A DNA stretch of 64,000 nucleotides, taken from Haliotis rubra. Lineage: Eukaryota. Below, one piece after another: positions 254-57,110 of the stretch. Each line of letters starts with the position of its first letter. Position 1 is the first letter of the stretch. The translations under genes and the position numbers were made by a program. The stretch covers positions 310,001-374,000 of the forward strand of contig NW_025765015.1 of the NCBI RefSeq assembly GCF_003918875.1, read 5' to 3'. The notes beneath the pieces were generated by a model. The model did no database searches, had not been told where the DNA came from, and worked only from the letters and a program-made list of their open reading frames with translations.

Positions 254-286
254 ATCTCATTGCTTGAAGCTGACCACTGTGCCCTG

Positions 287-4839: not shown

Positions 4840-7800
4840 ATGAAATACTGGACACATCTTCTGTGTAAGTAGAGAACTATTATCGCTCGGCGATATATGT
4901 TTATATATGTGAAAGAATTGGCTTTATATTTATTTTCATAAATATGTTTCACAAATTACATATGAGTCGATTAAAGTTACAATTTACATCTGTTCTTTTT
5001 TTGTACCATCTGTTGAAATTACAAAAACAGTCACTTATCAGTTAACAAAGTTCAATGGACATCTCAAGAATACCCTTCGTTAAAACGCGGACAAGATCTA
5101 CTGAACGTATTTCGACACTATACACTGTAAATCTGAAGATGTGATTGTTGCTTATATTATCAACCATTGGTTTGTCTCATAATAATTGTATTATTTACAG
5201 ACTGATGTGGTATTGTTGTAATTTAGCTGCAACGTGAAATACGTCACTGTAAAAACAGCGCACTCGTTTCCTACATCATATATTTTAATACAACACTGAA
5301 ACTTGTGAACACTGCCTGAATTTTAAACATGTAAAATGTACCTAACGAATATTAAGAAGACGTTTCAACAAAACCTATGAATATGTTTCTCAGTGTCTAT
5401 CTGGCTGTGATTTATAGTGTGCTACATTTTCCCCCTTGTCATTTCAGTCATCGTGACCACCTGTTGCTATGTCTCCACACAAAATGTTACCACAGAAGGA
5501 ACAGACACGGTCCCGACTGTATCTATATCAAGAGAACTTCGCCCAGGGTCGTAAGTTATTTAGCATTTTTAGGTGGTTTTTTATAATAACATAAGCTCCT
5601 GCGTCTTGTCATATTGTCATATAGTACCACAGGGTAAGTCCTTTTTATCACTACTTTGTGATTTGTAAAAACTTAATTTTTGTGTGTGTAAAATCTTGAT
5701 ATATTCTGAGGCATATGTCTGTATATTGTATTTTATCTGTGATGCATTATATTCATATATGCAATAATTATTATAATCATACCGATATTCCCTTGGGGAA
5801 AATGTATATTGTGTATATTTGTTGAAATTGTAGTGTTTACACATAATAACAGAAAGCACTGCACATCACTGCATCAAATCTGAATATATTCTTTAAGGTA
5901 CTCGTTTATTGTATTTACCTGTAATTACCATCCTTAATAACATGAAAAGGATAAATGACTTCTTTGAGTGGCATTTTAGAAGCTGGGAAGTACAAATTTG
6001 ACAAACTTTATGGATAACAACTTTTTGCACTCTCGTAATAAAGAAGTTGTTATCCATAAAGTTTGTCAATTTTAATAAGGATAAATGAGAAAGAATATAT
6101 GAAAGTGAAAACATGTTCAAAATGATACATTTATATATAGTTTGAAAGGTTTTCATTAACATTTACATACGAACGTCGTAACGAGATACTGCTATGCAAT
6201 AGTTCATGTACATAAGCAGCATCAGTTACACTGAGGAGAAGAGTAATCAATCAACCATGGATAGAATCAATGATATCTATATCATGATCGATGAATGGAA
6301 TGCGGATGTGTTGACGGCATAGGAAACTATACGACAGATAGAAAGATATTTTATACACACTTCTTTGACAAACTGTAACTCCACGCATAGCCGGGGGCAT
6401 GTATTACGCATTAATCTATACCCTGGAGACAGGGTCAGACAAGGATATAGTTCACCTTCGCCTTTCTTCCTGTTATCGAGGTACAACACACTTCCTCTTT
6501 GTCGTAATGTTATACGAGACGTGCAGCCACACTTAATTAAGGGGCACTTAACTGTCAATAGCTGATAGATGACTCTTGAATTGTAAAGTGTTCAGTGTTG
6601 TGTACACTGCTTTAAAATGAAGGCTTCATTCTACGATTTAACTGACGCTACTTAACTAACATATGGCTCAATTTATCTGTCGTTCCTCAGTTTGTTTGTT
6701 ATGTAGTCACCCCTGTTTACAATAACCTAACGTCAACCTATCCGATAGTATTCACTTTTGTCAGTTATGTTTGAAATATTGTGACAGGCAAGGCACAATA
6801 ACACAAGGAATCTTAGCTTTGGTTCACTTCAATCATTAAGGTTAGAATTAAGGCTAGCTTGGCCTGACGTTCCCGAAACAGCCGCATCTATGTTTTAATA
6901 TCGTTATGTCAACATCAGCGTTAACGTCGACATCGTAAGGCTGTATGACTTCTGAAACCTTTGAAAACAACGATCTGCTGTTAACACAGAACAGTTTAGA
7001 ATTGGTTTCTTTCTGGCACAAATTATAAGCGCTGATTTTTTAGCTTGATTTACATAAAGGTCAAATGTAATTTCTAAGCTCGATCGGTTACGAACCTATC
7101 GCTAACTTCCATCACATTATAATCTTGTAAATCAAAGTATAACGGCTCTAATTAATTAATCTCGGGTAAATCTCGGGCACAACATTATGGATTGATCAGG
7201 GTAGTTTCCTCTTCCTCGTTTTTTCGTGACACTGCAGAGTAAACGACTCACATACTGATGTGTTAAGGGTATTCCTGAGATCCTGACATTCCTTACGAAT
7301 GTAATGACTCATTGCTTAAACAAATAAAGAATTTATAATACTACATATTCCATACATGTGAGTAGTGTGGTAACTCTAAAGTAATTAAGTCAAAAGGTCA
7401 CACCAGGATCGATAACATGGTCTCGGGCGTATCCCGACTCACCCATCCCGACATTCCTCCCAACGTATCTGGTCAGTTAGCCTGCATCAGACGAATGGCA
7501 AGCAATATAAAACCACGAAAGCATAACGCTTTATAGGTAGCATCAGACCCACACATACTTCCATGAAATATGATAAGTGATTCAGCAATATTCTTAGAAC
7601 CAATTACACCACTATATCATTGTTCACTTAAAATAGCTTTGGTCTCCCCGTTCCTGGGATCGTTGGAATTCTGACAGCAACTACAACTTCTTCACCATCA
7701 ACAACGACGACAGGTAGACAATGTCCCCCGGGTGAGAGATGGAACCGACCCAGGACAAGAAGGTAAGGCTTCAGATTCCAATCTGGACACCAAACAAGCC

Positions 7801-10800
7801 ATCTACATATATACCACGAACCTTGGTAATGTTTTAACCAGACACTGAACTCCTACTGGTTTCAACTCCATACTTACCCGTGAAGATCCGGGTTAGAATT
7901 GGTCTTCAGCAACCCATGCTTGTTAGAGGAGGCGACCAACGGGATTAAATGGTCAGGCGCATTTGGTTGGCACATGTCCCAATTGCATAGATCGATGTTC
8001 ATGCTGTTGATCAATGGATTGTCTGGTCCAGATTCGATTATTTGCAGACCGCCACCATGTAGCTGGAATATTGTTGAGTCCGGCATCAAACAGCAAACAA
8101 ACTATTCGATGCTGTAACTTCATGAACTCCCCTGGGCCACATCAGCGTCTATTATTGTTCTCCCTTTGTGTTCTAACATTTGTCCGTCCCACCGTCAGCT
8201 TCCTGGAGTGTCTGTGTGAGCGGGGAGGACCTGACCATCAGCCATGTATCCTGAGACTTAGCAACGTCCTGGGCGCCTTTTCCGGAAGGGTCATACCGGC
8301 CATTCTGCCTCGACTGACCGGCACTGATGTCGGCTTCCTCTATCTCTGGACATTTGAGGGTCAGTCAGCATGCGATCCAAGTTTTTTTTCCAACAGAAAA
8401 GTATCACTTGGGTCTAGATCCACATATTTTGTCACAATTCTAACGTCAAATAAAAGTCTTCATTAAGGATATTTTATTTTGTTACACAAAGCTGCAAAAA
8501 TGATACTTCACAAGGAAAGTTTATCAAATGCCTTCTGACAATTACTGAAGTCACATATAAGTGAGTGATCAGGCTCTTTGACTTGTTTGATTGTTTGATT
8601 GTGTATCATTGAACCCGAACCCTGAACTGTTGTTCATAATATCAGTCCCTAGGTTAACACAGACTTGATCATGTAGCACAAGGTGTATTATTGCCGGAAC
8701 GGTGAAGGAAACAACAAACAAACCATATTAATGAGCTTCAGACGTACAGTCGGCTAGGTTTCCGTATTACCTCATGCGATCGGAGAGATTCGGGTTAGAA
8801 TTGATCTTCATGCAGCTACCCATGCTTGTCGGAAGAGGCGAATAATGGTATCAGGTGGTCAGGCTCCCTGACTTGGTTGACACATGTCATCGTATCCCAG
8901 TTGTGTAGATCGATGCTCATTGGATTGTCTGGTCCAGACTCGATTATGTTAAGACTGCCGCCATGGCTGGAACATTGCTAAGTACGGCGTTAAACAACAA
9001 ACAAACAAAACCAATTCTGGATGCCTGAGGTGTGCCGGAATGTCTTCCTTAGTGACGGTTTCTAAGTTTGTTGCTGTCATTTTTAGCCCACGCAAGTCAT
9101 TGTGATGTACGTTTCGTCAGAAAAATGGCATTTTCGGTCAAGAAAGGTAGTAAAAATAATTGAATGTTTCTTGATATGTGCCTGTTGTGTAATTGCCTCA
9201 CACCAATATGGAACGTATACCGTCTTGTCTACTTTCAATGTTGATGCCTGATTGTGTATTGATACTATAATCATTGTAATCATATTACACCACACAGATG
9301 CATGCGGGGTTATTTTCTGCTGACTTCCAAGTTTACGTCCCCTTGTTGCCAAACAAACATGCTGAACATTGCGGCCCTTAGAAACATCAAACAAATATGG
9401 CCGACAGGTATCCGGATTAATACAAGCATGCAGTCAGTCGAGGAATTGCCATTAAATTCACTTCTGTTTTTTCCTTTTATTCCAGGATTTCAGTGTAACC
9501 CCTTCATGGGGATGGGTGGTTTGAGTATTGCGTGTTACCATGACATCGGGAATTCCCCTTTCTCCAGAGACTGTCGGTGAGCATTCGCTAGCAGACTTTC
9601 ATAACAACCTTATGTTTCACTCGGTTCCCATCCGACTCCAGCCAAGGTTACCATAGTCGTGGAAAGGATCGATATAAAAAAAATGAGATTTTACAACAAA
9701 TCTTACGTTCAAAGTCTAATAACTATGTTAATTTGTGTCAGAGGGGACAGAATACATTCTATCATAAAAAAAACTCGCAAGTGAAGACCGAGATATTCCG
9801 AACGAATGTTACATCTATTATTCATAATGTTCGTGAATATAGATGTTGTTACTTAGCACAACTGCACAGGAGCAGTACCATGAATTACGTTTGACAGTAT
9901 ATTCAAAATAATGAAAATATATTTTATATAACTTTTATTTCCACCTAATCATTTCGACAGACAATGGTTCCCTGTTTACATATATTTTATATTCCGATTA
10001 TATCGAAGACGTGCCACTAACTACTTTCACTGTTTGTGTAGTTTTAGCAGGTCTCGCTATTTCTGTGAGTTGCTGATGTGCGTCGACACCATCCTCGCCG
10101 ACACGAGAAGCGCCCCGCAAGACTTCCTCAACTGTGAGAATCAGTCCTGAACTGTGTATTGTTACTAATTTAACATGCTAAAATAACTGTGACACATTCA
10201 CGTTCACGTCAGTACAAATGAAGAACGATATCCTATGAATTCCCTGGTAGAAAACCTGATGTGTTGTTATCTGAGGAGTATTAAAATGATTCCTTTATTC
10301 AGGCGTACGGAGGATAGCTGTACCCGCCCAGAACAGCCCAGTCTACACATGGCCTCATACCCGGATAACCCACCCACCGATCATCATCACCCACCGCACA
10401 ACCACCACAGACGAGCCGGCTGTGACGTCATCATTACGTCACGATGACGCCGACCACGCCGATCACCTTGAATTCGACCAGGACGAGCATGGGGCGCTAG
10501 GCGATGAACACTACAAATATGGTAGGACATTACTGTCTGAGGGGGGCGGGGCGGTGGGGTAGCCTAGTGGTTAAAGCGTTTGCTCGTCACGTTGAAGACC
10601 CGGGTACGGTTCCCCACATGGGTACAATATGTGAAGCCCATTTCTGGTGTCCCCCGCCGTGATATTGCTGCAATATTGCTAAAAGCGGCGTAAAACCATA
10701 CTCACTCACTCACTATAGTTGTGGACTATCTCCCCGACGTCAGTATATTTGGACATACACATGTAGACTGTAATTCCTCGTAAACTTTTCTCATCTTCCT

Positions 10801-13229
10801 GTCAAACTTTCAATTCCCAAACCCTAGAAACGAGTAAGTTGAGGGCTTTTATCATTAGCTATCAGTTAGGTGAGGTGAAATTGGGTTTTACGTCGTACTT
10901 GAGAATATTTCGCTCATATGACGACGTGCATGCGTGTGTATGTGTATGTGCGGCTGCTTGTACTAGCCCAGACTGAAGCTGGTTTTATAGTGCTAGCCCA
11001 CTGAGATACCATGCCGCAGTGAAGCATGAATACCCCACTCAGACACATTATACTGACTCCGCGAGCCGACCAGTCCTTGTTGTACCCATTAATGCCGAGC
11101 GCCAGGCAGGGACCAACAAGTACCATATTTTAACGTCTTTTGGTATGACGCGGTCTGGGATCGAACCCACGACCTTCCGCTCTCCGGGCGGACGCTCTAA
11201 CCACTACACAACGGAGGCGGTCAAGCTATCAGTGAGTGAGTGAGTTTTCACCGTATGTACAGTAAGACCGACGTGTACGGTATGTGCAGTTACATCAGGG
11301 CGGGCGGGCTTGTGTGGGAGGAATGATACAGGTCTCAGGGGTTTACCACAGACGCCACGAGCACGAACACTTTACTGGCGTGCCCAAGGGCGGCAACTCA
11401 GAGCAGCTTTGGGCCAATGGACCACCCCTGTTTCTTGGTAACCTCTTGGGCAGGGGCGGATACAGCTCTTTAAGAAAGGGGGGGTGCACACTATTGAGAA
11501 AAGGAGGGGTGCACACTTCATTTTCACCCGAGTTTCAATGGTCATTTAACAAACTTTCACCACAAAAGAGGGGGTGCGCACCCCTGCACAACCACCACCC
11601 CCCCCACCCCACCACCCCTCTGGATCCGCCTATGTTGGGTGATCATAATTTCTTGTGTCTTCCTCAGATATTATTCGAATTGTTGGAGGCGTGTTTGGCG
11701 GCGTGATGACCGGCATCTTCATCACCGCTGTCATCTTCATCCTCTGCTGGTTTTCGAAACGGAGAAGGTAGTTTACGTTTTCCAATTTCTCGTATTCGAA
11801 AGTGAACAATGCTGCAAAGGCGTTAAAACATGCAACTATTAATATAAAAAAATAACTGACATTTTTGCATTAGATTAAAAAATAATTTACCAAATGTGCA
11901 TGTGGTAGAGAAAGTGTTTAGCACAGTTCCCATCCAACTTTCAACTGTTTAGTATACAACATGTACAAGTTGTATTACAGGGAGCAATGTCGAGCTGTTA
12001 CATGTGACACTGGTAAGTGGTAGCAAATACACATACACTGATAATACAATAAACATGCTGCATTTCAGAGAACATTCTTCATCCTCTTCACCTCGGCCCA
12101 GGATGTCCGTCCGTACACAAGAGTCTGCAATCTATGCTGAAGTTGACGATACGGTAGGTATCATAGTGGGGCGGAAACCTGAGAAGGAATCGGACTTGAG
12201 TGAGTGAGTGAGTTAGTTTTACACCGCACTAAGCAATATTCCAGCTATATGGCGGCCGTCTGTAAATAATCGAGACTGAACCAGAAAATCCAGTGATCAA
12301 CAGCATCAGCATCAACATCGATGTACGCAGTTGGGATACAATGACATGTGTCAACCAAGTCAGCGAGCCTGACCACCCGATCCTGTTAGTCGCCTCTTAC
12401 GACAGGCATGGGTTACTGAAGATCAGTTCTAACCCGGATTTCTTCACGAGTCCGGACTTGAGACTCAAGTCAAGAAATGTTAAGGTTTTATTTACTGTAT
12501 AGGGTGTGGTTTTGAATCAATTACTGCCGAACAAGCGACAGCACTATCCACAAGACTAACCCTGAAGCCTGCTAAAGTGTATGAATAAAATGCAGCTTGC
12601 AGTACAAACTGTAGCAAACGCAGCACCTCAGTGAGATATTTAATTGTAAGTATTTATCAAAGCTCCTGAAGAAAGTATACGTTTTCATATGCTTGACTTT
12701 CACACTGGATTTTCACACTGACATATTCTTGATTTCCAGGGTTCTGACACAGGTCTCTGTAACGCTGGGTACCTTGCTCGCCATGCCCCTGATATCATCA
12801 GCGTCGTTGGCAACAAGTCCGCAGTCGACGACGCCGCATACAATACTCTCAACAACATCAACATATCCCCCGGGGAACGAGGCTACCTGGGGCGCCCCCT
12901 GTCGGTAGACAGTCAACAATACTCGACTATAACGGACCAAGACTCGCTGTCCAAACGGTCTTCCCGAAGCAGCGTCTACAACAAGCTTAGAGAGGATGGG
13001 AAGACCACCGTCGGCGAGCACGTGTACAACAGAGCACAGTTCCCACCCTATGAGGAGTACCAACCGGCGGCAGAGGGGGTATGAGTGTGTCTCTAAGAAG
13101 CAGAACAACTGCGACGGTCCCCAGAAGACTATCATGAAGAAACAACCTTCCACCAGCTCTATAAAGAAGAGGGTGTACTTTACCCTGGAACCGATGGAGT
13201 ACTTGGGAAAACCGTCAGACAAGATGTAA
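4840..13229 (+). CDS. Receptor paralog A: type I membrane protein with signal peptide, Cys-containing ectodomain, stalk, TM and Tyr-motif tail
   Basis: Phase-compatible exons 4840-4864 (MKYWTHLL), 5448-5550, 7637-7762, 8199-8359, 9486-9576, 10051-10133, 10303-10521, optional 11339-11437, TM 11668-11767 (IVGGVFGGVMTGIFITAVIFILCWFSKRRR), 12069-12153 (..AIYAEV), last exon from 12740 (YNTL, YSTI, SVYNKL). Stop is 13084 as assembled, or 13229 if one G of the run at 13075-13079 is extra. Confidence 0.75.
5967..6070. repeat. Dispersed palindromic element (26-bp arms)
   Basis: TTGACAAACTTTATGGATAACAACTT..AAGTTGTTATCCATAAAGTTTGTCAA; homologs ~44852-44995 and ~54693-54757. Confidence 0.7.
7876..8100 (+). 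mobile_element. SINE-like family S3
   Basis: Homolog of 1-253. Confidence 0.8.
8785..9010 (+). mobile_element. SINE-like family S3
   Basis: Homolog of 1-253. Confidence 0.75.
10548..10714 (+). mobile_element. tRNA-derived SINE family S1
   Basis: GGGGTAGCCTAGTGGTTAAAGCG..GACCCGGG head and (ACTC)n tail. Confidence 0.8.
10867..11223 (-). mobile_element. tRNA-derived SINE family S2
   Basis: A/B-box head GGTTAGAGCGTCCGCCCGGAGAGCGGAAGGTCGTGGGTTCGATCC; TSD AGCTATCAGT. Confidence 0.85.
11451..11633. mobile_element. Harbinger-like MITE
   Basis: GGCGGATACAG / CTGGATCCGCC termini with GGGGTGCAC internal motifs. Confidence 0.55.
12197..12448 (-). mobile_element. SINE-like family S3
   Basis: Homolog of 1-253; flanked by repeated CGGACTTGAG. 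Confidence 0.8.
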
Positions 13230-13533
13230 CGGTTCTTTGAAGCGAAACTGACACAACGTCACTGAATGTTAAAACCTAGGCAATACTTTGCTTGTCAATA
13301 ACGTAGCGAATCATTTAATATATGGAAAGACGGTTTATACTTACTTGAGTTTCCTTTCGTTTAGACACTCCTTCGATGAAGTTACAGAGTCTTAAACAAG
13401 AAACACGTTACTTGTATATCTTGCATCTAAATGTAATGAAAATTACAATTGTCCAATTGTTTATTCAGTGTGACAATGCACATCCACTAATATCATTCCA
13501 GTGGGCCCACAAACAATATATTCGTTGTCTAAC

Positions 13534-16424: not shown

Positions 16425-16466
16425 ATTCCCCGATAAAACCCATACCCCGCCAAAGCGCCTACGATA

Positions 16467-21172: not shown

Positions 21173-21204
21173 CTATTTACCTACAAAAGTATGTTTCATT
21201 CATT

Positions 21205-24600: not shown

Positions 24601-25106
24601 CCGATGTTCAGGCCACCTACAACAGGTTGAGGGACAATAACTTGGCCAGTGCCCATCTCCGGCAAACTGGTAATGGATCATCAGCAGAATATTTCGTCCT
24701 GGAAGAATCTGATGGCAACTACAACAGACTAGGGCAAGCTGCTCCCATCACTACGACTGATGCCACGAGTGGCTATCACAGACTTGGGGACACAGCCGAG
24801 GCTGGAAGTCCTCAAGCCAAGGACACTGAAGCGCCACCACCCGATTACTTCGTCCTAGAGGAACCTGCAGACACGTACAACAAACTTGGAGTTACTGTTG
24901 CTGCAACTGAGATGGCTACAAAGAACACCTATCACCGATTGGAAAACACTGATGTTGATACAGGGAACAGGGATCCAGAACCTTTCGAAACTGTGCTTGA
25001 AAAGTCAGGTGACAGCTACAACAAACTTGGAGAGAAAACGTCTGCTGAAGAAGCACACGGCACGTACAACAAACTTGGAGAGGTCACTTCCGAGATCAGA
25101 ACCTGA
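21666..25106 (+). CDS. Receptor paralog B: signal peptide, Cys microexons and intact Tyr-motif tail; no stalk/TM exon found (possibly truncated or pseudogene)
   Basis: Exons 21666-21690 (MEGVFVFL), 22122-22188 (VSLIWICDAS..), candidate Cys exons 22557-22606 and from 22798, juxtamembrane exon 23995-24049 (RRQESPGKQQTDTHAYLGP), last exon 24300-25106 open for 268 codons with 12 YxxL/I motifs. Confidence 0.6.
22992..23601. repeat. 37-bp minisatellite, ~16.5 copies
   Basis: GTGAACACATCTCACACATAAATTGGTGATCCAGTAG with period 37. Confidence 0.95.
24300..25106 (+). CDS. Terminal cytoplasmic exon of paralog B (ITAM-like motifs)
   Basis: Acceptor TCCTTAG|G at 24299, in frame with ORF 24486-25106; YAII-x8-YTEI, YFVL-x6-YNRL, YFVL-x6-YNKL. 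Confidence 0.8.
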   Translation, partial: GHTSDSSDKNKGTNEKTSSVPDLVKTSVEPAAGEYAIISEPADVGDYTEITEDISGAAAGVSMTTASHGMTTLDGRKPEDAADNLAGQYNKLGESINLTITDVQATYNRLRDNNLASAHLRQTGNGSSAEYFVLEESDGNYNRLGQAAPITTTDATSGYHRLGDTAEAGSPQAKDTEAPPPDYFVLEEPADTYNKLGVTVAATEMATKNTYHRLENTDVDTGNRDPEPFETVLEKSGDSYNKLGEKTSAEEAHGTYNKLGEVTSEIRT

Positions 25107-46057: not shown

Positions 46058-46477
46058 AAGGAAGATGGACAGGAAACGCCGCCCAAAGGGTATGTCTCTT
46101 TCTCTGTGGAAAACTGTTCATAACAGTATAGTTTGGTGTAGCTGGGGTAAAAAAACAACCAAACCAAACAGGCTACAGAACGTTCTGTCACAGTCCTGGG
46201 CGTTGGTTAAGGTAACAACAGGGTCAGTGTCAGCGAAGGTATAAAGTTATTTGTGTATACCTGTGTAACGGGGAACAGGTCTGGTCAACCGGGATCTCAA
46301 AATAACTTTCATACAGTTTTATGTAAACATATCGAGTCGACGTTGAAGGAACCCATGTAAATAATTCGAGTTATCCGATGTTCGATTCAACTGCAAAATG
46401 ATGACTTAGGAAGGAGTATGGGTACAAAGCGCTATTTCGAGACAACCATAAGTGTGCTTGCATGAGTGAGTGAGTAA

Positions 46478-46560
<83 letters not shown>

Positions 46561-49500
46561 TAATAGTTCTATTATATTTTCAGGGGCAGATAGAGGGAGA
46601 AAAAGAGACAGGTAATATTGTTGTCTTCGGTGCAACCTGTTGGTGTAGGTGTTTGTTTCCACATATGCCTGTTTTAAAACTGTTCACCCTATACTCGTCA
46701 TAAGTTTAATTTAGTGTTTGATTTCGTTGGCCTTGAACGCCCGACTGTGATGTTGATGGGTTTCCTGAAATATCAGGGCCGCCATTGAATGGTGTTATTT
46801 GTTTTGTTATTTTGCTTGTTTTGTTCATTTCATATGTTTTATGTTTTTTGTTTACATTGTATTTGCTGTTTGGGAGTGGGGAGTGTGTGATCTTTTTTTG
46901 TTTTCTAGGAAGGGGAGGTATTTGTCATATTGGGACTTGGGGTGGGATTGAGAGAGTGTAATTTATCTTGAATGAATATTCACGAAAAATTTCGCGATTT
47001 CTGTTTGAAGCAATAATTTTGAATATCGAGTAAAAGGGAAGTTTGCAACACATAATCTTGGTTATTTATTTGCTGTAGATCTGGCCGCAGCTGCCCTCCT
47101 TCTCCACGTAAGTATAACCATTTATTACTTACCACTGATATTCTTTTGGTGGCAGGGGTGAGCAGTGGGGACGGGGGTGCCGATAACATTATTTTGTCAC
47201 ATCGGTTTTTACAATAAACTGTTATCTAAACAGAATCGCGCATGGTATCAACGTCTTTGTTAAACATCCCAGAGTGGGTGAATGAGTTGACAAAAACCTA
47301 GTATGTTTACAAATCATGTTTATCTACATTTTGATTAAAACGACCAATGTCTAACCTTTGTGTAAAAATTGACTGTATTGATTTTTCCATCACATGGGAT
47401 AAATAAACTCTGTCAAAAAAAGAAACGCAACCCCTGTATTTTAGAGATTTTGATCTGAAGTTTTAGGACGACACGGCATTTTTATTATTTAAGACAGAAG
47501 TCTGAAATTTGGCAGAATAATAACCCAGATGGGCATGTTTAAAATTGTCATTTCAAAAGTCATCTCACAGACACCAGTTTGTCACCAGGGGGGCGTCTTT
47601 CTCAGTATCTCGTATGAGCACCACGCGCTGCAATCACTGCACGGCATCTCCTTGGACAAGAACGGATAAGACGCCGGATTCTTTCCTGGGGGAATGGCTC
47701 TCCACTCCTCCTGCAGTGCAACGGCGAGCTGTTGCAGCGTCTGTGGCGGCGGCTGACGTTGACGTACGCGTCGATCCAGAGTATCCCACAGGTGTTCAAT
47801 AGGGTTGAGGTCTGGTGATTTAGAGGGTCATGGCAAGACATTGACGTTGGAATTCTGCAGAAAGTTCATTGTTGCACGTGCAGTATGAGGCCGGGCGTTG
47901 TCCCGTTGAAAAATCTGTGTCTGTTGGTCAATAATCGGGAGAAGGTGAAGCTCTAACACGTGGTTGATGTAACGTTGGGCTGTCAGGTTCCCTGGAACGA
48001 TCACCAAGTCTGATTTCTGGTTGTATGAGATGGTTCCCCAAACCATGACGCTTTCTCCGCCAAATCTGTCCACCTGTCGGACGCAGATGGGCGCAAAACG
48101 TTTATGACGTCTCCCATACAGACGCTGTCTTCCGTCGTGACGTTGCAAAAGAAAACGTGATTCATCAGAAAACCAGATTCGCCTCCAGTTTTGTAAAGTC
48201 CGTATCCTTACGTTGTTGCACCACCTGAGTCGTCGGCGTCGATGTAGGGGCGTAGTACAGGTCCAACAACTGGTCTACAGGCACGTAAACCCGCTTCTTT
48301 CAGACGGTTCCTAATCGTTTGAGCTGACACTCTCCTCAAACCTGGTATTTGTGTGGCAGTTACGGTTGGTAGGGCATGCCGATTACGCAGGTGATGGACC
48401 CGGATGTACCGATCTTGAAGGGGGGTCGTGATTCTTGGCCTTCCACTTCTCGGGCGATCGTTGGTCAAATTGACGTTGTTGTAGCGGCTCCAAAGTCGGG
48501 ATATCGTTGTTTTGTGAACATTTAGGTGCCGTGCAACAGTTCCAAAACTTTCTCCGGCTTGAACACGACCAATGGCGATATTTCGGTCGGCAGCACTCAA
48601 TCGTGGCATTTTAACACAGCTTTTCGGCGACAAATGAATGAATATAATACGGAAGCACATGGGCTTTTATACACCCCTACATTAACTGCCATTTTCATGA
48701 TTTGCATGTGTTTTTTTTGTGCGAAGTCACCATGAGGGTCATTTCATGCGTTGTGACGGAATAAGCAATAAAATACACTTATGCGTACAAATGCAGTTGT
48801 TTGGATGGTCATCTTCATTAATTACGTGTCTCATTTCAATACATTCGAATAAAATTTAGTTTGGAAGCAATAACTTCATTCAAACGAATTTTTCATATCT
48901 GAGGACAGGGGTTGCGTTTCTTTTTTGACAGAGTTTATTTCAATGTCCAAACAATTAAGGATCTTATTATAATGTCAATTATCATTAACAGGTCACAATT
49001 CAATTCTGGACTCACAAAAGTCCAGTAACTCTCCGCATTGTGGACACTTTCTGACAAGGGATTTAACCAAATTAAACATGCAGTTGTCATGAACATATGT
49101 CAAGGATGAAAAAATGAAAACAATTTTTTTCGAAAACTCAAAATTTAAACTCGCTCGCCCATGGGCCGGCACATTGGCGAGAATGTTGTTTGACTCAGAA
49201 TTCATGTTTTGGAGGTTGTAAATGAAAGAATGTATGTTTATACGTATCATGACACAAAATTCAACTCATTTTGACTTAATTCGGCTAATTTAGAGCGATA
49301 TTTAATACTTGTTTTTTAAGGAAATAGAATTATTAGATCAATTTTGAGCAATATGTTTTGTAATAGATAAACGGGATTATAAAATTGTAGTATAAATTAG
49401 CAATTGCGATTGTTAGTGGCTGTATCCTGAAAGGGGGCTGAAGTATCGTAAAATTATGGTCCTCCTAAGAGGGCACGTAAGTCCCAAAATTATCATTAAA

Positions 49501-52500
49501 ATATTGACACAGTTCACTGTTTGTTACGAGGGAGGAGTGCAGAGAAAGGGACAGCCAGGTGTTCGAGAAGCACGTTCACAGACAAAGTTATTTATTCATT
49601 AACCTGTGCTGTCTCCATCCGTTCTCGAACACCTGGCTGTCCCTTTCTCTGCAATCCTCCCTCGTAACAATTAGTGAACTGTGTCAATATTTTAATGATA
49701 GATTGTTAAACAACTTTATTATTTTTAGGACAAAAATTCTGCAAAAACCTCACAGTGTGGGTATGATGTTTTGATTATGATCAGCGTTTCACTGAGTATT
49801 TTATGTTTATTAGTTTTCGAGTTAGATTGCAATTCATCGGTCCGCTTTTGTGCCAAACGGACTATAGTATGGTGATCTACCTTCAGTTGTTGGCGATCTA
49901 CAGCCTGTTAGTATACTGTATTGTCTTCGTAAATAAAACAGTGTTACATTTCCCTTATAGTTTTAAACTCCATCTGTGATACTCTAGTTATTTTACAGTC
50001 CTTCGATGACTGGTTATTTAACAACTTATATTTATAGTGTATGCCAAACCTTTCTCGGCACTATATCTCTGAAATATTGACGTTAAATTTTAAGTCACTC
50101 AGTCATTCACTTTGTGTGAGTGAGTGAGTTAAAATGTAAAGTCACATCGGCAATATTTAAGCCATATCGTGACTAAAATAAGTCATCATAAATACAGGTG
50201 AGGTAAATCACTAAAACCTGTCAACGAAGGACAGTAAAACCAACTAGAATATCACAGACACAAACAAATATAACTAGTATATATCTCTAAACCTGAATTT
50301 CAGATTTGGACAATACAATATAACGAAGGGCTATAGATCGCCAGCAGCCATACTAGGGACTCACTTTGTGTGAAAGTGTATGTGACCGTCAACGTTTAGA
50401 TAGTCATACCAAAAGACATCAACGATGGTACATATATATTTGACCTGTATATTCTGTTGTAACAAGAAATGGGATCGGCTTCTGTTTCTTCTCAGATGTT
50501 GCTTCAATCTATTCAACTTTTCAAAGTTTCATATCGTTATTTGTAACATTGTGTGCAATACGTATATGTTTGTTTATGTGTCAAGAATATAGAATCATTT
50601 GTGTCTATCAATTATTTCAGCTGGAAATGGAGCGGGCAATAGTGGCAGGTAATGCCCTTTTCTTTAATGAGACGTTTTGGTACACATGCTTGTATCCACC
50701 CATGCTCGTCCAGGCTGTTAGCTGTAGCCTATCGCTACAGACAGTGGTGAAGTCTATGTAATGTTATTAGTCTTAAGGCACCTGGACCGCTTCCGTGGTG
50801 TAGTGGTTAGAGCGTCCGCCCGGAGAGCGGAAGGTCGCGGGTTCGATCTCCGGTCGAGTGATACCAAAAGACGTTAAAATATGGTACTTGTTGGTCCCTG
50901 CATGGCGCTCGGCATTAATGGGTACAACAAGGACTGGTCGGCTCGGAGTCAGTATAATGGGTCTGAGTAGGGTATTCATGCTTAACTGCGGCATGGTATC
51001 TCAGTGAGCTAGCACTCTATAGTATGACCAGAAATTATTGAGAATTTTAGGAATATGTTTAATTGGATTTCTAGTATAAACAACCTTGACCAGCTATCAA
51101 GTGCTTGGTTTCATTTAAATAAGACAACTCGGTTAATCCTTTTTCATTAGTTTGTGAAGAGTTATCCCCCTTTGTTTACTTGCTAGCAGACGACATTTTC
51201 AGTGATCCTCAGTATGGATGATTTAGAGAACAGGAAGTTGATTTTAGAGGACATCAGATCAGCTAAAATGATTTCAAGTAGAACAGGCATCCCTTTGTTT
51301 ATCGTGTTTTGAAAAATATTGCAAATGGATGTGGCACTGAGCACCAGGTAGACGCAGGTAGGCCCAGAAAATTGACTGTCAGTGACAGGAGGCGGCTTGG
51401 TATTCTTGTTTCTAAAAACAAACGAAGGAGTTTAGAAAACTTAAGGCTGGATATGATTGATAGAGGAACTGTGGTTGTCTGTAAGAAGACAATTAGAACT
51501 GAGCTGCATGCAATGGGTTGGCAGAAAAGTCGAGGAATTCAATCACCGATCATGAAACCTGAACAAAAGGAGCGAAGGTTGAACTGGAGCTTACAGCATA
51601 GAAGTTTTAACTGGGGCAATGGGATTTTTCTCAGATGAAAGTTCTGTGTGGCTGTTTCCTAAAACACTGAACTTCTGGACCAAACAAACTGAAAAACCTT
51701 TGTATCAGCGCCAAAATTTGTACAGTCCGAAATTTAACGTGTGGGGTGGCATATCTGTGTTATTTTAAGGGAATATGGGAGGGAATATGAATAGTGAGCG
51801 GTACACAGATATTCTCGAGGGACATTTACTTCCATCTGCTCACGTGTTCTATGGAAATGTTTGGATTTTCCAGCAGGACAACGACCCAAAACATCGTTCA
51901 AAGCATTCACAGGCCTGGTTTCGGACCCAAAATATGGCATTATTAGATTGGCCAAGCTATAGCCCTGACCTAAATCCAATAGAAAATGTCTGGGGACTTA
52001 TGAAGGAAAGTGTCAATTAGAAATATCTGACAAATATTGCTGAAATCAAAGAAGAGGTGGTCCGATATTGGGACAGCATGGACCACGACTTTCTAACTTC
52101 TTTGAGTAGTATGCCCCGCCGCATTGAAGCCTGCATTGCTGTTCATGGTGACTTGACAAAATACTAACTGTTTACCTGTCTTTGAATCTGGAGTTATGTT
52201 CTGCTGATATTCACATTTAATATGTGAGTAATGAGTGAAAGAAATATAAAAAATTACAATCTTTAAATTCTCAATAATTTCTGGTTGTACTGTAAAACCA
52301 GCTTAAATCTGGGCTAGTACAAGCAGCCGCACATACACATACACAGGAATGCACGTCGTCATATGAGCGAAATATTCTCAAGTAGGACGTAAAACCCAAT
52401 TTCACCTCACCACACCTCACCTCACCTCACCTCACCTAAGGCACCCGACCGTATTTTTGCAAAGGTTTAAGAGTTTCTCGACTCCGGACCTGGGCAACAT

Positions 52501-55500
52501 GACTTACTGAAGACGATCGGCCAGAGTTGATAAAATCAAGAATCATTCAAGATAGTTTATTGTACATAAGGCCCCGACCCGTTTCCATAATATCATAATC
52601 ACAGGCAAAGTATGGACAGTGCAAGTAGTGACAGTATCATATCATTGTGTCATTAGTTGCCGGAAGAAGTCAAACTCTTTCTTAATGTCAATGAACGTGC
52701 TGCTGATATACTGGGTGTCCTGGAATATTTTGAGTAATTAAACTAATATGGATAATATAGACAATGAAACATTCGGGATCCTAGTGGGAATATATTTACG
52801 ATGTTGTGCCTTAAATACATATATGGAATCGTGTGTATTTAATCATGATTTTGTTTTGTTTTCTAGATCTCACAGCAGATGTCGTAGTTCTTCACGTGAG
52901 TAGAACCAGGGATCACTTTCGTTGATATTGTTGGTGCGGGATGAGATGTCGGGAAAATAGCATGGCCTCGTTGGGTTGTACGAAACACAGAACATGTTTG
53001 GTTAACACGTTACATGCCCTGAAAATCCGGTTTTGAAAACACAACAAAACGGCCGCGGTATCAACATGTCGTTGGACATGTTTGAGTGGATGGGTATTCG
53101 ATAACATAATCTCTTCATGTTCTGTCTGATTTTGATGTTCTGATTATGTGTTCTCTGCAACCACAGGAAGATCCCCCACAAGATCCCCTACAAGATCCCC
53201 CACAACACAGGGTACAACTACAACAGATGGCGCCATCACCACGGGTGCCGATACAACCACACACACATTAACTGGTACCTCCCCAAACACGAGTACAACC
53301 GTGGCCACAAGCAAACCAACCACCACGGGAAGACCCCCAGGTATTGCCTTTGTGACATGGTGTACAAGCTGGGATACAACCTCTATAGTATATTAGCTAA
53401 AACATATCTCAAGAACTTGTCGTAAACTAGTAATAATTAATCATATAGTATTATGACAAATATTTTCATACATATATATAATTCATGTGGATATACGTAG
53501 TGTGTTCAGCTGGTTTGATGGGATAGCGATACGTATGAACTAAATGTATTAAAGAAATGATAATACCTCTTATGTTAACTTGCCCATGTCCATATGCAGC
53601 TGATGCCTCCCCTAAAAATGGCCATGTAGTAGGCGGAGCTGTTGGTGGTCTCGTCGGAGGTGTCGCCATTACTGTTATCCTCTTTCTACTCTGGCGTTTC
53701 TTCCGAGCTAAGAAAAGGTACTGGTAACAAAACACAAAGTCCTTTAAAAACTGGCATGATGGTAGACTGACTGACTGAGTTTGGTTTTACGCCGCTTTTA
53801 GCAATATTCCAGCAATATCACGGCGGGGGACACCAGAAATGGGCTTCACTCATTGTACCCATGTGGGGATTCGAACCCGGGTCTTCGGCGTGACGAGCCA
53901 ACGCTTTAACCACTAGGCTACCCCACAGCACCGGCATGATGGTAGAACTGTAGAGGGTCCGTGGTTCGAATCCCAGCACGGGACTTTCGTGTGATTATTT
54001 AATAGGAGCCAAACAGGTCTGAGTACCATGCCTTCTGTTGACGGGGAAGTATGTAGCTGGTCGTGGGGTCATCCAACAGATGACATCCTTATCTTGTCAG
54101 CTTGCTGATAGGGTTAATCTCTTTGGTCATACGGACAAGGCGCCTGATAAAGGATCAGAAGATCCGTGGTTTGAAACTTTATGGCCACTATACTCTGTCT
54201 CACAGTCCCTCAACCATACTAATTTCCCTACAGTCTAGCCCTAAAGACGTCAATGAAGCAAGTCTGGAGATAGGACAGGGCTTAACACGAGGGCCAATAA
54301 ATATGCCTGTCACTTATACCGGTGACTTCTAATTGATGACCCCAACACGTGTAGCCCCAATGCAGGTGGTTTTTGTCTCTGAATCTCTGGTCTCCCTCGG
54401 GCTCCTTTTCAATTTAAATGGGTTAATTTGTTACAATCAAAATCATATATTTAGAGACTAAGCGCTAGTCTATGACCAGCACCAACACCACGTATGTTCT
54501 ATATCCATGGATATAGTGTCTTGGTGTTTTCTGGCGTATGAGTGCTCTTCCACCATATCAGGAACCTGAGCCAGGAAATTCAAAATAGCTCATGACCGAA
54601 GTGTTGTCAGACAAAAACACATTGTAAACGAGAGCTGAAAGTGAAGCATTTCTTACAGAGAATAACATACCAGGCATAATAATTGTTTGATCGGCATTCT
54701 AGAAGTTGGTGGGTCAAAAATGAAACATACAACTTTATGGATGACAAGAAGTTGTATGTTTCCTTGTTTTATACCAGGCATTGTTGTTGTTGACTCGTGA
54801 TCTAACCTGAGTGAGTTGGAGTTGTCATAGACAGCTACTCACAGAGGGTCCCTTACGGTATGAGCACTTCTTAATGCGACCCGCGAAGATCCGGGTTAAA
54901 ATTAGTCTTCACCAAACAGTGTTTGTCCTAAGAGACGACTTACGGGATCGGGAGGTCAGGCTCGTTGATGTCATCGGATTCCAGACTCGATTATTCACAA
55001 ACCGTCGTCATATAGCTCCAATATTGCTGAGTGTGGCGTTAAGCAATAAACAAAAACTTGTTATGATTATTTTATTCGTATGATTTACATGGGTCTTGCT
55101 GCATCTGTTTGGTTTTCTTGAACAAACAAAACAAAAGCTTGAACAACACTGCTTTATGTGACCAACATTGCTGTTACAGAAGAGGAGACCGACCGAAGGA
55201 AGGAGAGACAGAAAACCCTCACACATACATGGGATTAGTAAGTTATGTCTTATTTATATTAATATTATTTTGTTTATCTATATATCATATCACCATCTGG
55301 ATCATGGGAGTTAGTGGCACCGTATCCATGTGTGTCATGTCATTGCTGTGGAGGAAGCGTGAAGTAGGAGAACATACATGGTCTTGTCTGTAGAACATCT
55401 ATGGGTCTTTTTCTAAACTTTCTCCCCCGCTTCACATCGCAAAGCTCCAGGACATCTAGGTAGAAAGTAAAGGGAAACTGAATCCTGCATATATTTTGAT

Positions 55501-56358
55501 GACTGATCAGTATTCTTTCCCACAGGTTGTTCTCAATATCCACTTCATTGGTTAATACCTGTAATTTTGTGGATGTAAATCTATAACTCACCATTCATAT
55601 GTAATGCCTTCCTTTCCCAGATTTACACCAACAACCCCAGCAGTTTGGTGATGTCCACAGTCCCGGATGTAATCATGGTGTCGCCAGCGCAACTCGCCCC
55701 CAATGAGGCGGAAGCTGAGTATAATGTTATTCAAGAGGAAGAAAATTACCAGTTGGCAAAGAAGATGGTTTCTGCCTCTAAGCAGGCAGATTACGCAGAA
55801 ATCCCGGACACACAGAAGAGCGGTACATCACAACCTGCTGCTGAATATTTTGTCCTGGAGGAAGATGGCCACACAAGTGACGATTTAAACAGACTAAGAA
55901 ACGCTGCGACTCCGACTGGAGGAAAGGATACATACAACAGACTGGGAGACGACACTGCTTCGACACCGACTGATATGAAGGGTACATACAACAGACTGGG
56001 AGACGACACTGCTTCGACGCCGACTGATATGAAGGGTACATACAACAGACTGGGAGACGACACTGCTTCGACACCGACTGATATGAAGGGTACATACAAC
56101 AGACTGGGAGACGACACTGCTTCGACGCCGACTGATATGAAGGGTACATACAACAGACTGGGAGACGACACTGCTTCGACGCCGACTGATATGAAGGGTA
56201 CATACAACAGACTGGGAGACGACACTGCTTCGACGCCGACTGATATGAAGGGTACATACAACAGACTGGGAGACGACACTGCTTCGACGCCGACTGATAT
56301 GAAGGGTACATACAACAGACTGGGAGACGACACTGCTTCGACGCCGACTGATGTATAG
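46058..56358 (+). CDS. Receptor paralog D: microexon ectodomain, Thr-rich stalk, TM and tail with 8x 18-aa YNRL repeat; N-terminus unresolved
   Basis: Phase-compatible exons 46058-46089, 46584-46611, 47079-47107, 50621-50648, 52867-52895, 53167-53340 (Thr-rich), TM 53600-53717 (VVGGAVGGLVGGVAITVILFLLWRFFR), 55180-55237, 55621-56358. The frame stays open past the TAG to a TAA at 56478. The 5' microexons are less certain than the 3' half. Confidence 0.72.
46478..46557. repeat. (TG)n(AG)n microsatellite
   Basis: Direct observation. Confidence 0.95.
47406..48935 (-). mobile_element. Tc1/mariner DNA transposon, copy 1 (DD34E-type, defective)
   Basis: TA flanks; TIR AACTCTGTCAAAAAAAGAAACGCAACCCCTGT; HTH, FSDESRF, QRDNARPH, SPDLNPIEHLW; frameshift and TGA in the WPSKSPDL motif. 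Confidence 0.95.
49491..49700. mobile_element. MITE / foldback with ~85-bp inverted arms
   Basis: TATCATTAAAATATTGACACAGTTCAC..GTTCGAGAA mirrored at 49622-49700. Confidence 0.85.
50783..52436 (+). mobile_element. SINE family S2 split by a Tc1 insertion
   Basis: tRNA-like head at 50785, (CACCT)n tail, TSD TAAGGCACC. Confidence 0.85.
51020..52292 (+). mobile_element. Degenerate Tc1-like transposon nested in a SINE
   Basis: TIRs TAGTATGACCAGAAATTATTGAGAATTT / AAATTCTCAATAATTTCTGGTTGTACTG with TA flanks; FSDES, FQQDNDPKH, WPSYSPDLNPIENVW. Confidence 0.9.
53767..53932 (-). mobile_element. SINE family S1
   Basis: 14-bp TSD GGCATGATGGTAGA. Confidence 0.85.
55621..56358 (+). CDS. Terminal cytoplasmic exon of paralog D
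   Basis: Acceptor CTTTCCCAG at 55620, in frame with ORF 55645-56358; YNVI, YAEI, YFVL and 8x YNRL. Confidence 0.82.
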   Translation: MYTNNPSSLVMSTVPDVIMVSPAQLAPNEAEAEYNVIQEEENYQLAKKMVSASKQADYAEIPDTQKSGTSQPAAEYFVLEEDGHTSDDLNRLRNAATPTGGKDTYNRLGDDTASTPTDMKGTYNRLGDDTASTPTDMKGTYNRLGDDTASTPTDMKGTYNRLGDDTASTPTDMKGTYNRLGDDTASTPTDMKGTYNRLGDDTASTPTDMKGTYNRLGDDTASTPTDMKGTYNRLGDDTASTPTDV

Positions 56359-56376
56359 GATACATACAACAGATTG
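55930..56376 (+). repeat. Coding 54-bp tandem repeat x8 plus the start of a 9th
   Basis: TYNRLGDDTASTPTDMKG; starts 55930, 55984 .. 56308, 56362. Confidence 0.95.
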
Positions 56377-56464
56377 AGTACAATCGATCAGGACAATAAA
56401 GACATTAAACAACCGGAACCAAACGGACGGGAGCAGATTACTTCTGACCAAGTTATACCCTCAG

Positions 56465-57110
56465 ACACCAAGTTCTAATCTCCGTACACCAAGATTTACC
56501 CTCTAACACCAAGTTTTAACCTCTAACACCAAGTTCTAATCTCCATACACCAAGATTTACCCTCTAACACCAAGTTTTAACCTCTAACACCAAGTTCTAA
56601 TCTCCATACACCAAGTTTTACCCTCTAACACCAAGTTTTACCCTGTAACACCAAGTTTTAACCTCTAACACCAAGTTCTAATCTCCATACACCAAGATTT
56701 ACCCTCTAACACCACGTTTTAACCTCTAACACCAAGTTCTAATCTCCATACACCAAGTTTTACCCTCTAACACCAAGTTCTAATCTCCATACACCAAGAT
56801 TTACCCTCTAACACCAAGTTTTAACCTCTAACACCAAGTTCTAATCTCCATACACCAAGTTTTACCCTCTTACACCAAGTTCTAATCTGCATACACCAAG
56901 TTTTACCCTCTAACACCAAGTTCTAATCTCCATACACCAAGTTTTACCCTCTAACTTCAAGTTCTAATCTCCGTACACCAAGTTTTAACCTCTAACACCA
57001 AGTTTTACCCTCTAACACCAAGTTCTAATCTCCGTACACCACGTTTTAACCTCTAACACCAAGTTCTAATCTCCATACACCAAGTTTAACCCTCGAACAC
57101 CAAGTCCTAC
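56465..57110. repeat. 20/21-bp minisatellite in the 3' region of paralog D
   Basis: ACACCAAGTTCTAATCTCCAT / ACACCAAGTTTTAACCTCTA units. Confidence 0.92.

What the first reader, a model, noticed from the sequence alone, without database searches (positions are those of the whole stretch)
4840..56478. Tandem cluster of four orphan single-pass receptors with divergent ectodomains and multi-ITAM-like tails
Seen: four same-strand genes with a shared exon plan. The ATG microexon is 25 nt and phase 1 in A, B and C (and at 46065-46089 in D). A, C and D have a stalk and a phase 1-2 TM exon with GGxxGG (GxxxG) motifs; all four have a short phase 2-0 juxtamembrane exon (ending YLGP/SFGL/YMGL in B-D) and one large tail exon with YFVLE/YFTLE and YN(K/R)L motifs. 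The ectodomains show no similarity I can detect. Established: YxxL/I-x6-8-YxxL/I is the ITAM that docks tandem-SH2 Syk/Shark kinases; clusters of divergent single-pass genes underlie snail resistance loci (Biomphalaria GRC/PTC2) and Hydractinia Alr allorecognition. Inference: a fast-evolving invertebrate immunoreceptor or allorecognition-like locus with no named domain, which automated annotation would miss or fragment.
Basis: partly seen in the sequence, partly recalled or inferred. Interest (0 to 1): 0.88.

Follow-up and report, generated by a model that had tools for sequence, protein, structure and literature searches.

The report
Abalone-only membrane proteins with ITAM-like tails
This stretch of blacklip abalone DNA holds a real, largely unannotated cluster of abalone-specific single-pass membrane protein genes. 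Their long floppy inner tails carry repeated tyrosine motifs like those of immune-receptor signalling chains, but one of the four "genes" has lost its membrane segment and no function has been tested.

Summary
The window is Haliotis rubra contig QXJH01000111.1. The shared exon plan is real. It consists of a 25-nt ATG exon, a stalk exon (phase 1>1), a glycine-zipper TM exon (1>2), a short juxtamembrane exon (2>0) and one large tail exon. Annotated relatives in H. rufescens and H. cracherodii show the same plan.

There are three TM-bearing genes, not four:
- A is LOC124287857.
- B keeps only its two signal-peptide exons, its juxtamembrane exon and its tail. NCBI isoform X1 splices B's last two exons onto A.
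- C (633 aa) and D (369 aa) were not found among annotated H. rubra proteins. Their ectodomains are only mucin-like stalks.

The strict ITAM pattern occurs 3 times in B and 7 times in C. It does not occur in A or D. Five of C's copies come from a 102-bp x5 coding minisatellite, and D's YNRL motifs come from a 54-bp x8 one.

The family was found only in Haliotis, and no Pfam or PDB match passes. A is conserved (dN/dS 0.22), while B (0.48) and D (0.64) evolve faster.

A phosphotyrosine-signalling tail is the best reading, but it is an inference. An immune or allorecognition role is untested.

The parts
4840..13081 (+). Gene A (LOC124287857, isoform X2, 448 aa). Exons: 4840-4864, 5448-5550, 7637-7762, 8199-8359, 9486-9576, 10042-10133, 10303-10521 (stalk), 11668-11767 (TM), 12069-12153 (juxtamembrane), 12740-13081 (own tail).
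   Evidence: P0016 maps exactly onto these exons with GT-AG junctions. The H. cracherodii orthologue P0017 is 81% identical in the search table and syntenic.
13073..13228 (+). Extra G in a G-run shifts A's tail out of frame. The old frame, including VYFTLE, runs on to a TAA at 13226-13228.
   Evidence: DNA alignment with H. cracherodii L003 shows a single 1-nt gap and 92% identity. P0017 reads through this stretch.
21666..21690 (+). B: 25-nt ATG exon (MEGVFVFL), phase 0>1.
   Evidence: It matches the P0019 N-terminus (MEGVSVFV) and the H. rufescens microexon at L002:7457.
22122..22188 (+). B: 67-nt signal-peptide exon, phase 1>2.
   Evidence: tblastn of P0019 residues 6-23 hits here. The 67-nt length equals exon 2 of P0014 and P0005.
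22992..23601 (.). 37-bp x16.5 minisatellite lying where B's ectodomain and TM exons would be expected.
   Evidence: TRF. No TM-like or ectodomain-like match was found in 13300-24000.
23995..25106 (+). B: juxtamembrane exon 23995-24049 (ends YLGP) and tail exon 24300-25103 plus stop. The tail carries 3 ITAM-pattern units. NCBI isoform X1 (P0002) uses both exons as an alternative 3' end of A.
33683..40689 (+). Gene C (model of 633 aa; no annotated H. rubra protein found). Exons: 33683-33707, 34412-34466, 38031-38386 (mucin stalk), 38551-38677 (TM), 39016-39076 (ends SFGL), 39409-40686 plus stop.
   Evidence: The ORF is complete with GT-AG junctions. The first two exons are conserved in H. rufescens L006. 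Joining exon 2 directly to the stalk exon is my inference.
39973..40478 (+). In-frame 102-bp x5 coding minisatellite in C's tail. Each unit encodes AEYFVLEKSDxVYNKLG.
   Evidence: TRF reports 93% matches. It accounts for 5 of C's 7 ITAM-pattern hits.
44683..56358 (+). Gene D (model of 369 aa; no annotated H. rubra protein found). A 5'UTR exon ends at 44716. Coding exons: 46057-46089 (ATG at 46065), 53167-53340 (stalk), 53600-53717 (TM), 55180-55237 (ends YMGL), 55621-56355 plus TAG.
   Evidence: The region is syntenic with H. rufescens LOC124118203 (P0004).
55924..56373 (+). In-frame 54-bp x8.3 coding minisatellite in D's tail. Each unit encodes GTYNRLGDDTASTPTDMK.
   Evidence: TRF reports 97% matches.

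Best explanation
**Shown.** The locus belongs to a family of type I single-pass membrane glycoproteins found here only in Haliotis. Each member has:
- a signal peptide split between a 25-nt ATG exon and the next exon;
- a variable outer part (a conserved 10-Cys domain in A; only a Thr/Ser-rich mucin-like stalk in C and D);
- a glycine-zipper (GGxxGG) membrane helix followed by a basic stop-transfer stretch;
- a long, acidic cytoplasmic tail with no Trp and few or no Cys, and no predicted structure.

In the tails of B, C, D and their relatives about 85-90% of tyrosines sit in a YxxL/I context (about a third in A's own tail). The motifs come as (A/S)A(E/D)YFVLE-x5-YN(K/R)LG units, which fit the ITAM pattern, and as repeated xTYN(R/K)LG units.

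**Inferred.** The proteins cluster at the surface, either through the GxxxG helices or through binding to the outer part. Src-type kinases then phosphorylate the tail tyrosines, and the phosphotyrosines recruit SH2 proteins. A Syk-type tandem-SH2 kinase could bind where two tyrosines have ITAM spacing, as in B and C. The proteins would therefore act as signalling receptors or transmembrane adaptors.

B in this genome is an internally deleted copy. Its tail can only reach the membrane when spliced onto A, which is the predicted isoform X1.
For: - **Architecture and exon plan:**
- **Topology:** signal peptides in A, B and C, and a basic cluster after each TM helix.
- **Motif counts:** ITAM-pattern hits are B 3 and C 7, against about 0.01-0.02 expected in shuffles. 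YxxL/I accounts for 12 of 13 tyrosines in B, 18 of 21 in C and 11 of 13 in D.
- **Family-wide motif classes:** YF.L 31 instances and YN[KR]L 75 instances, each with fixed flanking residues.
- **Conservation:** both tyrosines, the leucines and the flanks are invariant across B-type tails.
- **Selective constraint:** tail dN/dS is below 1 (A tail 0.13, B 0.48, D 0.61).
- **Disorder:** the AF2 model of B's tail has pLDDT below 50 throughout, and 64-72% of tail residues are polar, Gly or Pro.
- **Precedents:** the oyster ITAM receptor CgIgR co-precipitates with CgSyk (PMC6994640). ITAM tails occur in the invertebrate Alr receptors (PMC9546547).
Against: - Nothing here shows expression, phosphorylation or SH2 binding.
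- A and D have no ITAM-pattern unit. D's first unit has Leu in place of the second Tyr, and its terminal unit is lost behind a TAG and a frameshift.
- The high motif counts in C and D come from near-identical minisatellite copies, so they are recent events rather than long-maintained features.
- The strictly conserved non-Tyr positions (F, V and E; N, K/R and G) point to a more specific partner than a generic ITAM reader.
- YN(K/R)L also fits the YxxPhi sorting signal.
- D has no signal peptide.
- The C orthologue in H. rufescens looks dead.
- I could not search for a Haliotis Syk/Shark kinase.
Confidence: 0.4

Rival explanations
1. The tyrosine motifs are trafficking signals. YN(K/R)L and YFVL would be YxxPhi motifs read by clathrin-adaptor mu subunits. 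On this reading the proteins are rapidly internalised or lysosome-targeted mucin-like surface proteins or cargo receptors, and no phosphotyrosine signalling is involved.
For: Almost all tail tyrosines outside A's own tail sit in a YxxL/I context, often with Arg or Lys at +2. This resembles the classic TGN38 YQRL signal (own knowledge). The outer parts of C and D are only mucin-like stalks, as in sialomucins such as endolyn.
Against: One or two such signals are enough for sorting; 8-19 copies per tail are not expected. The fixed 6-residue spacing of YFVLE and YNKL and the invariant acidic flanks are not features of sorting motifs.
Confidence: 0.2
2. Only A is a working gene. B, C and D are young, decaying duplicates, and their open frames and repeats reflect recent birth-and-death and minisatellite slippage rather than function.
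For: - B lacks ectodomain and TM exons.
- D ends at a premature TAG, followed by a frameshifted relic of the last unit.
- The H. rufescens C orthologue has lost the end of its TM exon and has a CA microsatellite in its stalk. A Logan C-like contig is frameshifted.
- No annotated H. rubra protein for C or D was found.
- dN/dS rises to 0.48-0.64.
Against: C keeps a 426-codon and B a 268-codon open tail exon, all with intact GT-AG sites. dN/dS is still below 1. The D orthologue and B-type genes have Gnomon models in H. rufescens.
Confidence: 0.15
3. This is the first reader's proposal: a hyper-polymorphic immune or allorecognition locus comparable to the Biomphalaria GRC/PTC2 clusters or the Hydractinia Alr complex, with diversifying ectodomains that read non-self.
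For: - It is a tandem cluster of single-pass TM genes, one of which lacks its TM, as at PTC2 (PMC7494358).
- Gene content differs between species: H. cracherodii has an extra TM exon and a short tail between A and B.
- Coding minisatellites are likely to vary in copy number.
Against: - The only globular ectodomain, in A, is strongly conserved (93% aa identity, dN/dS 0.15).
- C and D have no recognition domain.
- There is no detectable homology to any Biomphalaria or Alr protein and no Ig domain.
- Only one haplotype was available, so polymorphism is unknown.
Confidence: 0.15

Closest known systems
ITAM signalling chains of vertebrate immunoreceptors (CD3-zeta, FcR-gamma, DAP12, Ig-alpha/beta)
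   Same: Single-pass proteins with a tiny or simple outer part. The disordered cytoplasmic tail carries YxxL/I-x6-8-YxxL/I units, with several per chain as in CD3-zeta.
   Different: There is no sequence homology. The membrane helix has no charged residue for pairing with a ligand-binding partner and has a GGxxGG zipper instead. Residues beyond Tyr and Leu are fixed. Units are amplified by minisatellites. Binding to Syk/ZAP-70 is untested.
Oyster CgIgR and Drosophila Draper (invertebrate ITAM receptors that signal through Syk/Shark)
   Same: They are invertebrate type I receptors in which a cytoplasmic ITAM is reported to recruit a tandem-SH2 kinase (PMC6994640; Draper from own knowledge and as cited in PMC9546547).
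   Different: Those receptors have Ig or EGF ectodomains and a single ITAM.
Biomphalaria GRC and PTC2 clusters of polymorphic single-pass TM genes
   Same: They are gastropod tandem clusters of lineage-specific TM1 genes of about 170-530 codons. Some members lack the TM, and gene content varies.
   Different: There is no detectable homology. Polymorphism and any link to resistance are unknown here. A's ectodomain is conserved rather than hyperdiverse.
Transmembrane adaptor proteins (LAT, PAG/Cbp, NTAL)
   Same: They have a short outer segment and a long disordered tail with many tyrosine docking motifs. This is the best architectural match for D and C.
   Different: Those adaptors use YxN (Grb2) motifs and palmitoylated CxxC, with no mucin stalk. 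The abalone tails have almost no YxN.
Membrane mucins and sialomucins (MUC1 tail, CD43, endolyn)
   Same: They combine a Thr/Ser-rich stalk, one TM helix and a cytoplasmic tail with tyrosine motifs.
   Different: There is no SEA or other mucin domain and no homology, and the tail is far longer than the stalk.

Membership tests
ITAM-bearing receptor or signalling chain | Tail contains YxxL/I-x6-8-YxxL/I | tested here: met
   Met for B (3 units) and C (7 units), against about 0.01-0.02 expected in shuffles. Not met for A or D (0 units each).
ITAM-bearing receptor or signalling chain | The motif lies in the cytoplasm (type I topology) | tested here: inconclusive
   Signal peptides in A, B and C, plus a basic cluster after each TM helix, predict a cytoplasmic tail. 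No topology predictor or experiment was available, and D lacks a signal peptide.
ITAM-bearing receptor or signalling chain | Both tyrosines and the +3 Leu/Ile are conserved among relatives | tested here: met
   These positions are invariant across the B-type tails aligned. The terminal unit is kept in the P0005, P0008 and P0015 types. It is lost in D.
ITAM-bearing receptor or signalling chain | Phosphorylated by Src-family kinases and bound by the tandem SH2 domains of Syk/Shark | not testable with these tools
   This needs biochemistry. Only the oyster precedent is available.
ITAM-bearing receptor or signalling chain | A Syk/Shark-type kinase is present in the same genome | not tested
The literature search found nothing specific to abalone.
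Biomphalaria GRC/PTC-type polymorphic TM1 cluster | Tandem cluster enriched in single-pass TM genes | tested here: met
   Three TM genes and one TM-less relative lie within 52 kb on one strand.
Biomphalaria GRC/PTC-type polymorphic TM1 cluster | Exceptional divergence between haplotypes within the species | not testable with these tools
   Only one H. rubra assembly was available.
Biomphalaria GRC/PTC-type polymorphic TM1 cluster | Sequence homology to GRC/PTC2 proteins | tested here: not met
   All named hits of the exhaustive and profile searches are Haliotis; the Logan entries carry no name.
Hydractinia Alr / IgSF allorecognition receptors | Ig-like (V-set/I-set) ectodomains | tested here: not met
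   No Pfam domain passes in any family member. The AF2 model of A's ectodomain was too poor to search by fold.
J-domain proteins (weak PDB hits) | J-domain fold with an HPD motif | tested here: not met
   The hits have E-values of 0.1-0.9 and rest on DxYxxLGV only. There is no HPD in the sequence, and AF2 predicts no fold.

The most novel reading that the evidence does not exclude
A's conserved Cys-rich ectodomain and TM helix would be joined by alternative 3' splicing to one of two cytoplasmic tails. One is A's own tail, which has no ITAM pattern and one ITIM-like SVYNKL. The other is the neighbouring remnant's tail, which has three ITAM-like units. One receptor could then switch its signalling output, a splice-level version of paired activating and inhibitory receptors. 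Meanwhile, coding minisatellites in C and D would tune the number of docking motifs between individuals.
Probability: 0.1. Interest if true: 0.75.

Novelty: new variant of a known kind. Interest (0 to 1): 0.45.

Why it matters
Outside oysters, molluscs have few candidate receptors that could feed a Syk-type pathway. This abalone-only family gives defined, testable ITAM-like peptides, in a farmed genus troubled by infectious disease. It also shows how the gene family changes: by loss of internal exons, by capture of a neighbour's tail through splicing, and by in-frame minisatellites. Finally, it corrects the public annotation, in which no protein for two of the genes was found and one isoform is chimeric.

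Tried and rejected
- **Fold of A's ectodomain.** AF2 on a 2-sequence alignment gave pLDDT 36, too poor for a fold search, so none was run.
- **Sequence search of PDB.** With A's ectodomain and with the tail profile it returned only chance-level hits, to R2 retrotransposon proteins and J-domains.
- **Pfam.** Scans of 13 family proteins or exon translations gave only sub-threshold hits on TM segments.
- **B's missing exons.** I looked for them with sensitive tblastn using P0006, P0019 and P0020, with a hydrophobicity scan and with a GGxxGG scan. None lies in 13300-24000.
The candidate at 18167-18191 has no support. The start at 21666-21690 has homology support.
- **Extra ectodomain exons for C.** Candidates between 34467 and 38030 were not convincing, so I joined exon 2 directly to the stalk exon. 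That join is unverified.
- **Logan contigs P0009 and P0021.** Both come from one run (DRR299178), and P0009's N-terminus reads through what is intron-end sequence in D, so they look unspliced and give no evidence of expression.
- **P0008 locus lookup.** It failed because only the longest isoform is on record.
- **Literature.** I found nothing on this family or on an abalone Syk.

Full report
**Origin of the window.** The NCBI protein LOC124287857 isoform X1 of Haliotis rubra (P0002) maps exactly onto the window. Its gene is recorded at 314840-335106 of contig QXJH01000111.1 (GCA_003918875.1), which corresponds to window 4840-25106. The window is therefore blacklip abalone DNA, record positions 310001-374000. 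It contains no N.

**Gene A.**
- A search with A's ectodomain found isoform X2 (P0016, 448 aa). X2 uses A's own juxtamembrane exon (12069-12153) and tail exon (12740-13081).
- The same search found the H. cracherodii orthologue P0017 (501 aa, 81% identical in the search table).
- P0017's tail runs about 50 residues further and ends with VYFTLE. In H. rubra one extra G in a G-run near 13073-13077 shifts the frame, although the following 150 nt are 92% identical.

**Gene B.**
- B-type proteins with a complete architecture exist in H. rufescens (P0006) and H. cracherodii (P0019, P0020). They have a signal peptide, a small Cys-rich ectodomain, a TM helix, a juxtamembrane stretch ending HAYLGP, and a tail 61-62% identical to B's.
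- Using them as probes, I found B's 25-nt ATG exon at 21666-21690. It encodes MEGVFVFL, against MEGVSVFV in P0019. I also found its 67-nt signal-peptide exon at 22122-22188.
- There is no trace of the Cys-rich or TM exons anywhere between 13300 and 24000.
- The interval between B's exon 2 and its juxtamembrane exon is about 1.8 kb, against about 4.3 kb in H. rufescens. It contains a 37-bp x16.5 minisatellite.
- B is therefore an internally deleted copy. Splicing exon 2 to the juxtamembrane exon would stay in frame but would give a TM-less product. The only annotated use of B's tail is on A, in isoform X1.

**Genes C and D.**
- Both models are complete ORFs with canonical splice sites.
- C (633 aa) has exons of 25, 55, 356, 127, 61 and 1278 nt.
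- D (369 aa) has exons of 25, 174, 118, 58 and 735 nt.
- The window from 33.7 to 58.7 kb is collinear with H. rufescens locus L006, which carries LOC124118203 (P0004), the D orthologue.
- C's ATG exon and its next exon are conserved there, with ATG, length, donor site and open frame all retained. However, the H. rufescens C copy has lost the end of its TM exon and carries a CA microsatellite in its stalk.
- D's ATG lies in a 33-nt second exon that follows a 5'UTR exon ending at 44716. That UTR exon is conserved with exon 1 of P0004.
- All four ATG exons have a pyrimidine-rich CAG acceptor 1-19 nt upstream.
- D has no signal peptide, and its tail stops at a TAG at 56356. The stretch up to 56478 is a relic of the old frame.
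- No H. rubra protein matching C or D was returned by searches that would have found one.

**Family-wide exon plan.** Annotated relatives P0014, P0019, P0005, P0004, P0016 and P0017 all share the plan. A 25-nt first coding exon (0>1) is present in all except the P0004 model, whose CDS begins in an upstream 41-nt exon. Next comes a 1>2 exon, and most have a stalk exon (1>1). All have a TM exon (1>2; 100-151 nt), a juxtamembrane exon (2>0; 46-85 nt) and one tail exon.

**Tails and motifs.**
- The strict ITAM pattern occurs 3 times in B and 7 times in C. It does not occur in A or D. About 0.01-0.02 matches are expected in shuffled tails.
- In the tails of B, C, D and their relatives about 85-90% of tyrosines are in a YxxL/I context. 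In A's own tail it is about a third.
- Two motif classes dominate: (A/S)A(E/D)YFVLE(K/E)(P/S)(D/E)D(T) with 31 instances, and (G/D)TYN(R/K)LG with 75 instances.
- In B-type tails both tyrosines, the leucines and several flanking residues are invariant.
- The tails contain no Trp and few or no Cys, and 64-72% of their residues are polar, Gly or Pro. AF2 gives pLDDT below 50 along all of B's tail. This fits a disordered region carrying short linear motifs. The alignment was shallow, so the result is supportive only.
- Five of C's seven units come from a 102-bp x5 in-frame minisatellite (93% matches). D's eight YNRL motifs come from a 54-bp x8.3 minisatellite (97% matches).

**Distribution and relatives.**
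- An exhaustive phmmer search of 1.84 billion representative proteins with B's tail found 7 clusters. A profile search found 14 proteins. All are from Haliotis: rubra, rufescens, cracherodii, asinina and one unnamed sequencing run.
- The names given by NCBI ("location of vulva defective 1-like", "autotransporter adhesin BpaC-like") probably reflect low-complexity similarity rather than homology.
- No Pfam family reaches threshold, and no PDB sequence match is credible.
- In H. cracherodii the family occupies at least three loci on one chromosome, at about 41.6, 55.1 and 65.9 Mb.

**Rates of evolution.**

| Comparison | Segment | dN/dS | Other values |
|---|---|---|---|
| A, H. rubra vs H. cracherodii | whole gene | 0.22 | dS 0.37 |
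| A | Cys-rich domain | 0.15 | 93% aa identity |
| A | TM exon | 0.05 | |
| A | tail | 0.13 | |
| B, H. rubra vs H. cracherodii | tail | 0.48 | |
| D, H. rubra vs H. rufescens | whole gene | 0.64 | dN 0.53 |

A is a conserved gene. B and D are relaxed or fast-evolving, but none shows dN/dS above 1. Gene content also differs between species: H. cracherodii has an additional TM exon and a short decayed tail between A and B.

**Interpretation.**
- The architecture points to cell-surface proteins whose tails act as tyrosine-based docking platforms. It combines a type I topology, a glycine-zipper helix likely to drive self-association, and a disordered acidic tail in which nearly every tyrosine outside A's own tail is in a conserved YxxL/I motif.
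- ITAM-Syk signalling exists in molluscs: oyster CgIgR co-precipitates with CgSyk (PMC6994640). ITAM tails are known in invertebrate receptor clusters (PMC9546547).
- The step from motif to phosphorylation and SH2 recruitment is inference.
- The same motifs fit YxxPhi sorting signals.
- B, C and D show signs of decay.
- The comparison with the Biomphalaria PTC clusters (PMC7494358) holds for cluster architecture only. Homology was tested and not found, and polymorphism could not be examined.

**Verdict.** This is a real abalone-specific gene family with a well-defined shared structure and conserved ITAM-like units. It is partly missing from the annotation and partly mis-annotated.

Noticed in passing
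window 1-2626 (- strand): The upstream neighbour is a thrombospondin type 1 repeat gene. Its H. cracherodii orthologue also hits the chitin-binding family CBM_14. It is syntenic with gene A in both species.
   Followed up: partly
window 27061-27977: A large 12/15/27/42-bp satellite (unit CATCACCCAATGCAT). It creates long His-rich and Cys-rich pseudo-ORFs on both strands, along with a strong GC-skew dip.
   Followed up: no
window 56447-57114: A 41/61/102-bp satellite starts about 90 bp after D's stop codon and overlaps the relic of D's old reading frame.
   Followed up: no
window 47828-48660 (-), 60266-61105 (-), 51282-52017 (+), 61752-62120 (+): There are four Tc1/mariner-type transposase remnants with HTH_Tnp_Tc3_2 hits. 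Two lie inside D's 7-kb first intron, which is under 1 kb in H. rufescens.
   Followed up: partly
window 34780-36255 (-): A reverse-transcriptase (RVT_1) retroelement fragment lies inside C's second intron. It falls in a roughly 1.9-kb stretch with no counterpart at the H. rufescens locus L006.
   Followed up: partly
window 30-250, 7876-8106, 8786-9014, 12216-12446, 21203-21537, 29007-29146, 33290-33421, 43355-43593, 43796-43929, 58792-58992, 63378-63485: A SINE-like repeat of about 200 bp occurs in many copies in both orientations. Its translation includes ...LSGPDSIIYRPPPYSWNIAECGVK.... It is shared with H. rufescens and H. cracherodii at 70-90% identity.
   Followed up: no
window 53861-53927 (-): This is the only Rfam hit in the window, a tRNA-like match (31.8 bits). 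It lies inside a 160-bp repeat that is also present at 21017-21173 and in H. cracherodii L003, so it is probably a tRNA-derived repeat in D's intron.
   Followed up: partly
L004:3601-5550 (H. cracherodii, between A and the B-type tail): There is an extra family TM exon and a short, apparently frameshifted tail containing AEYFVLEK. It has no counterpart in the H. rubra window, so gene content differs between species.
   Followed up: partly
L002:24009-24103 (H. rufescens): A second copy of the B-type ATG microexon (MEGVYVFV) lies about 9 kb downstream of LOC124146542. This suggests another, unannotated tandem B-type gene.
   Followed up: no
window 13814-15081: A GC-rich block has overlapping ORFs of 100-170 aa on both strands and no Pfam match. 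It lies in the A-B interval and is possibly an unclassified repeat.
   Followed up: partly
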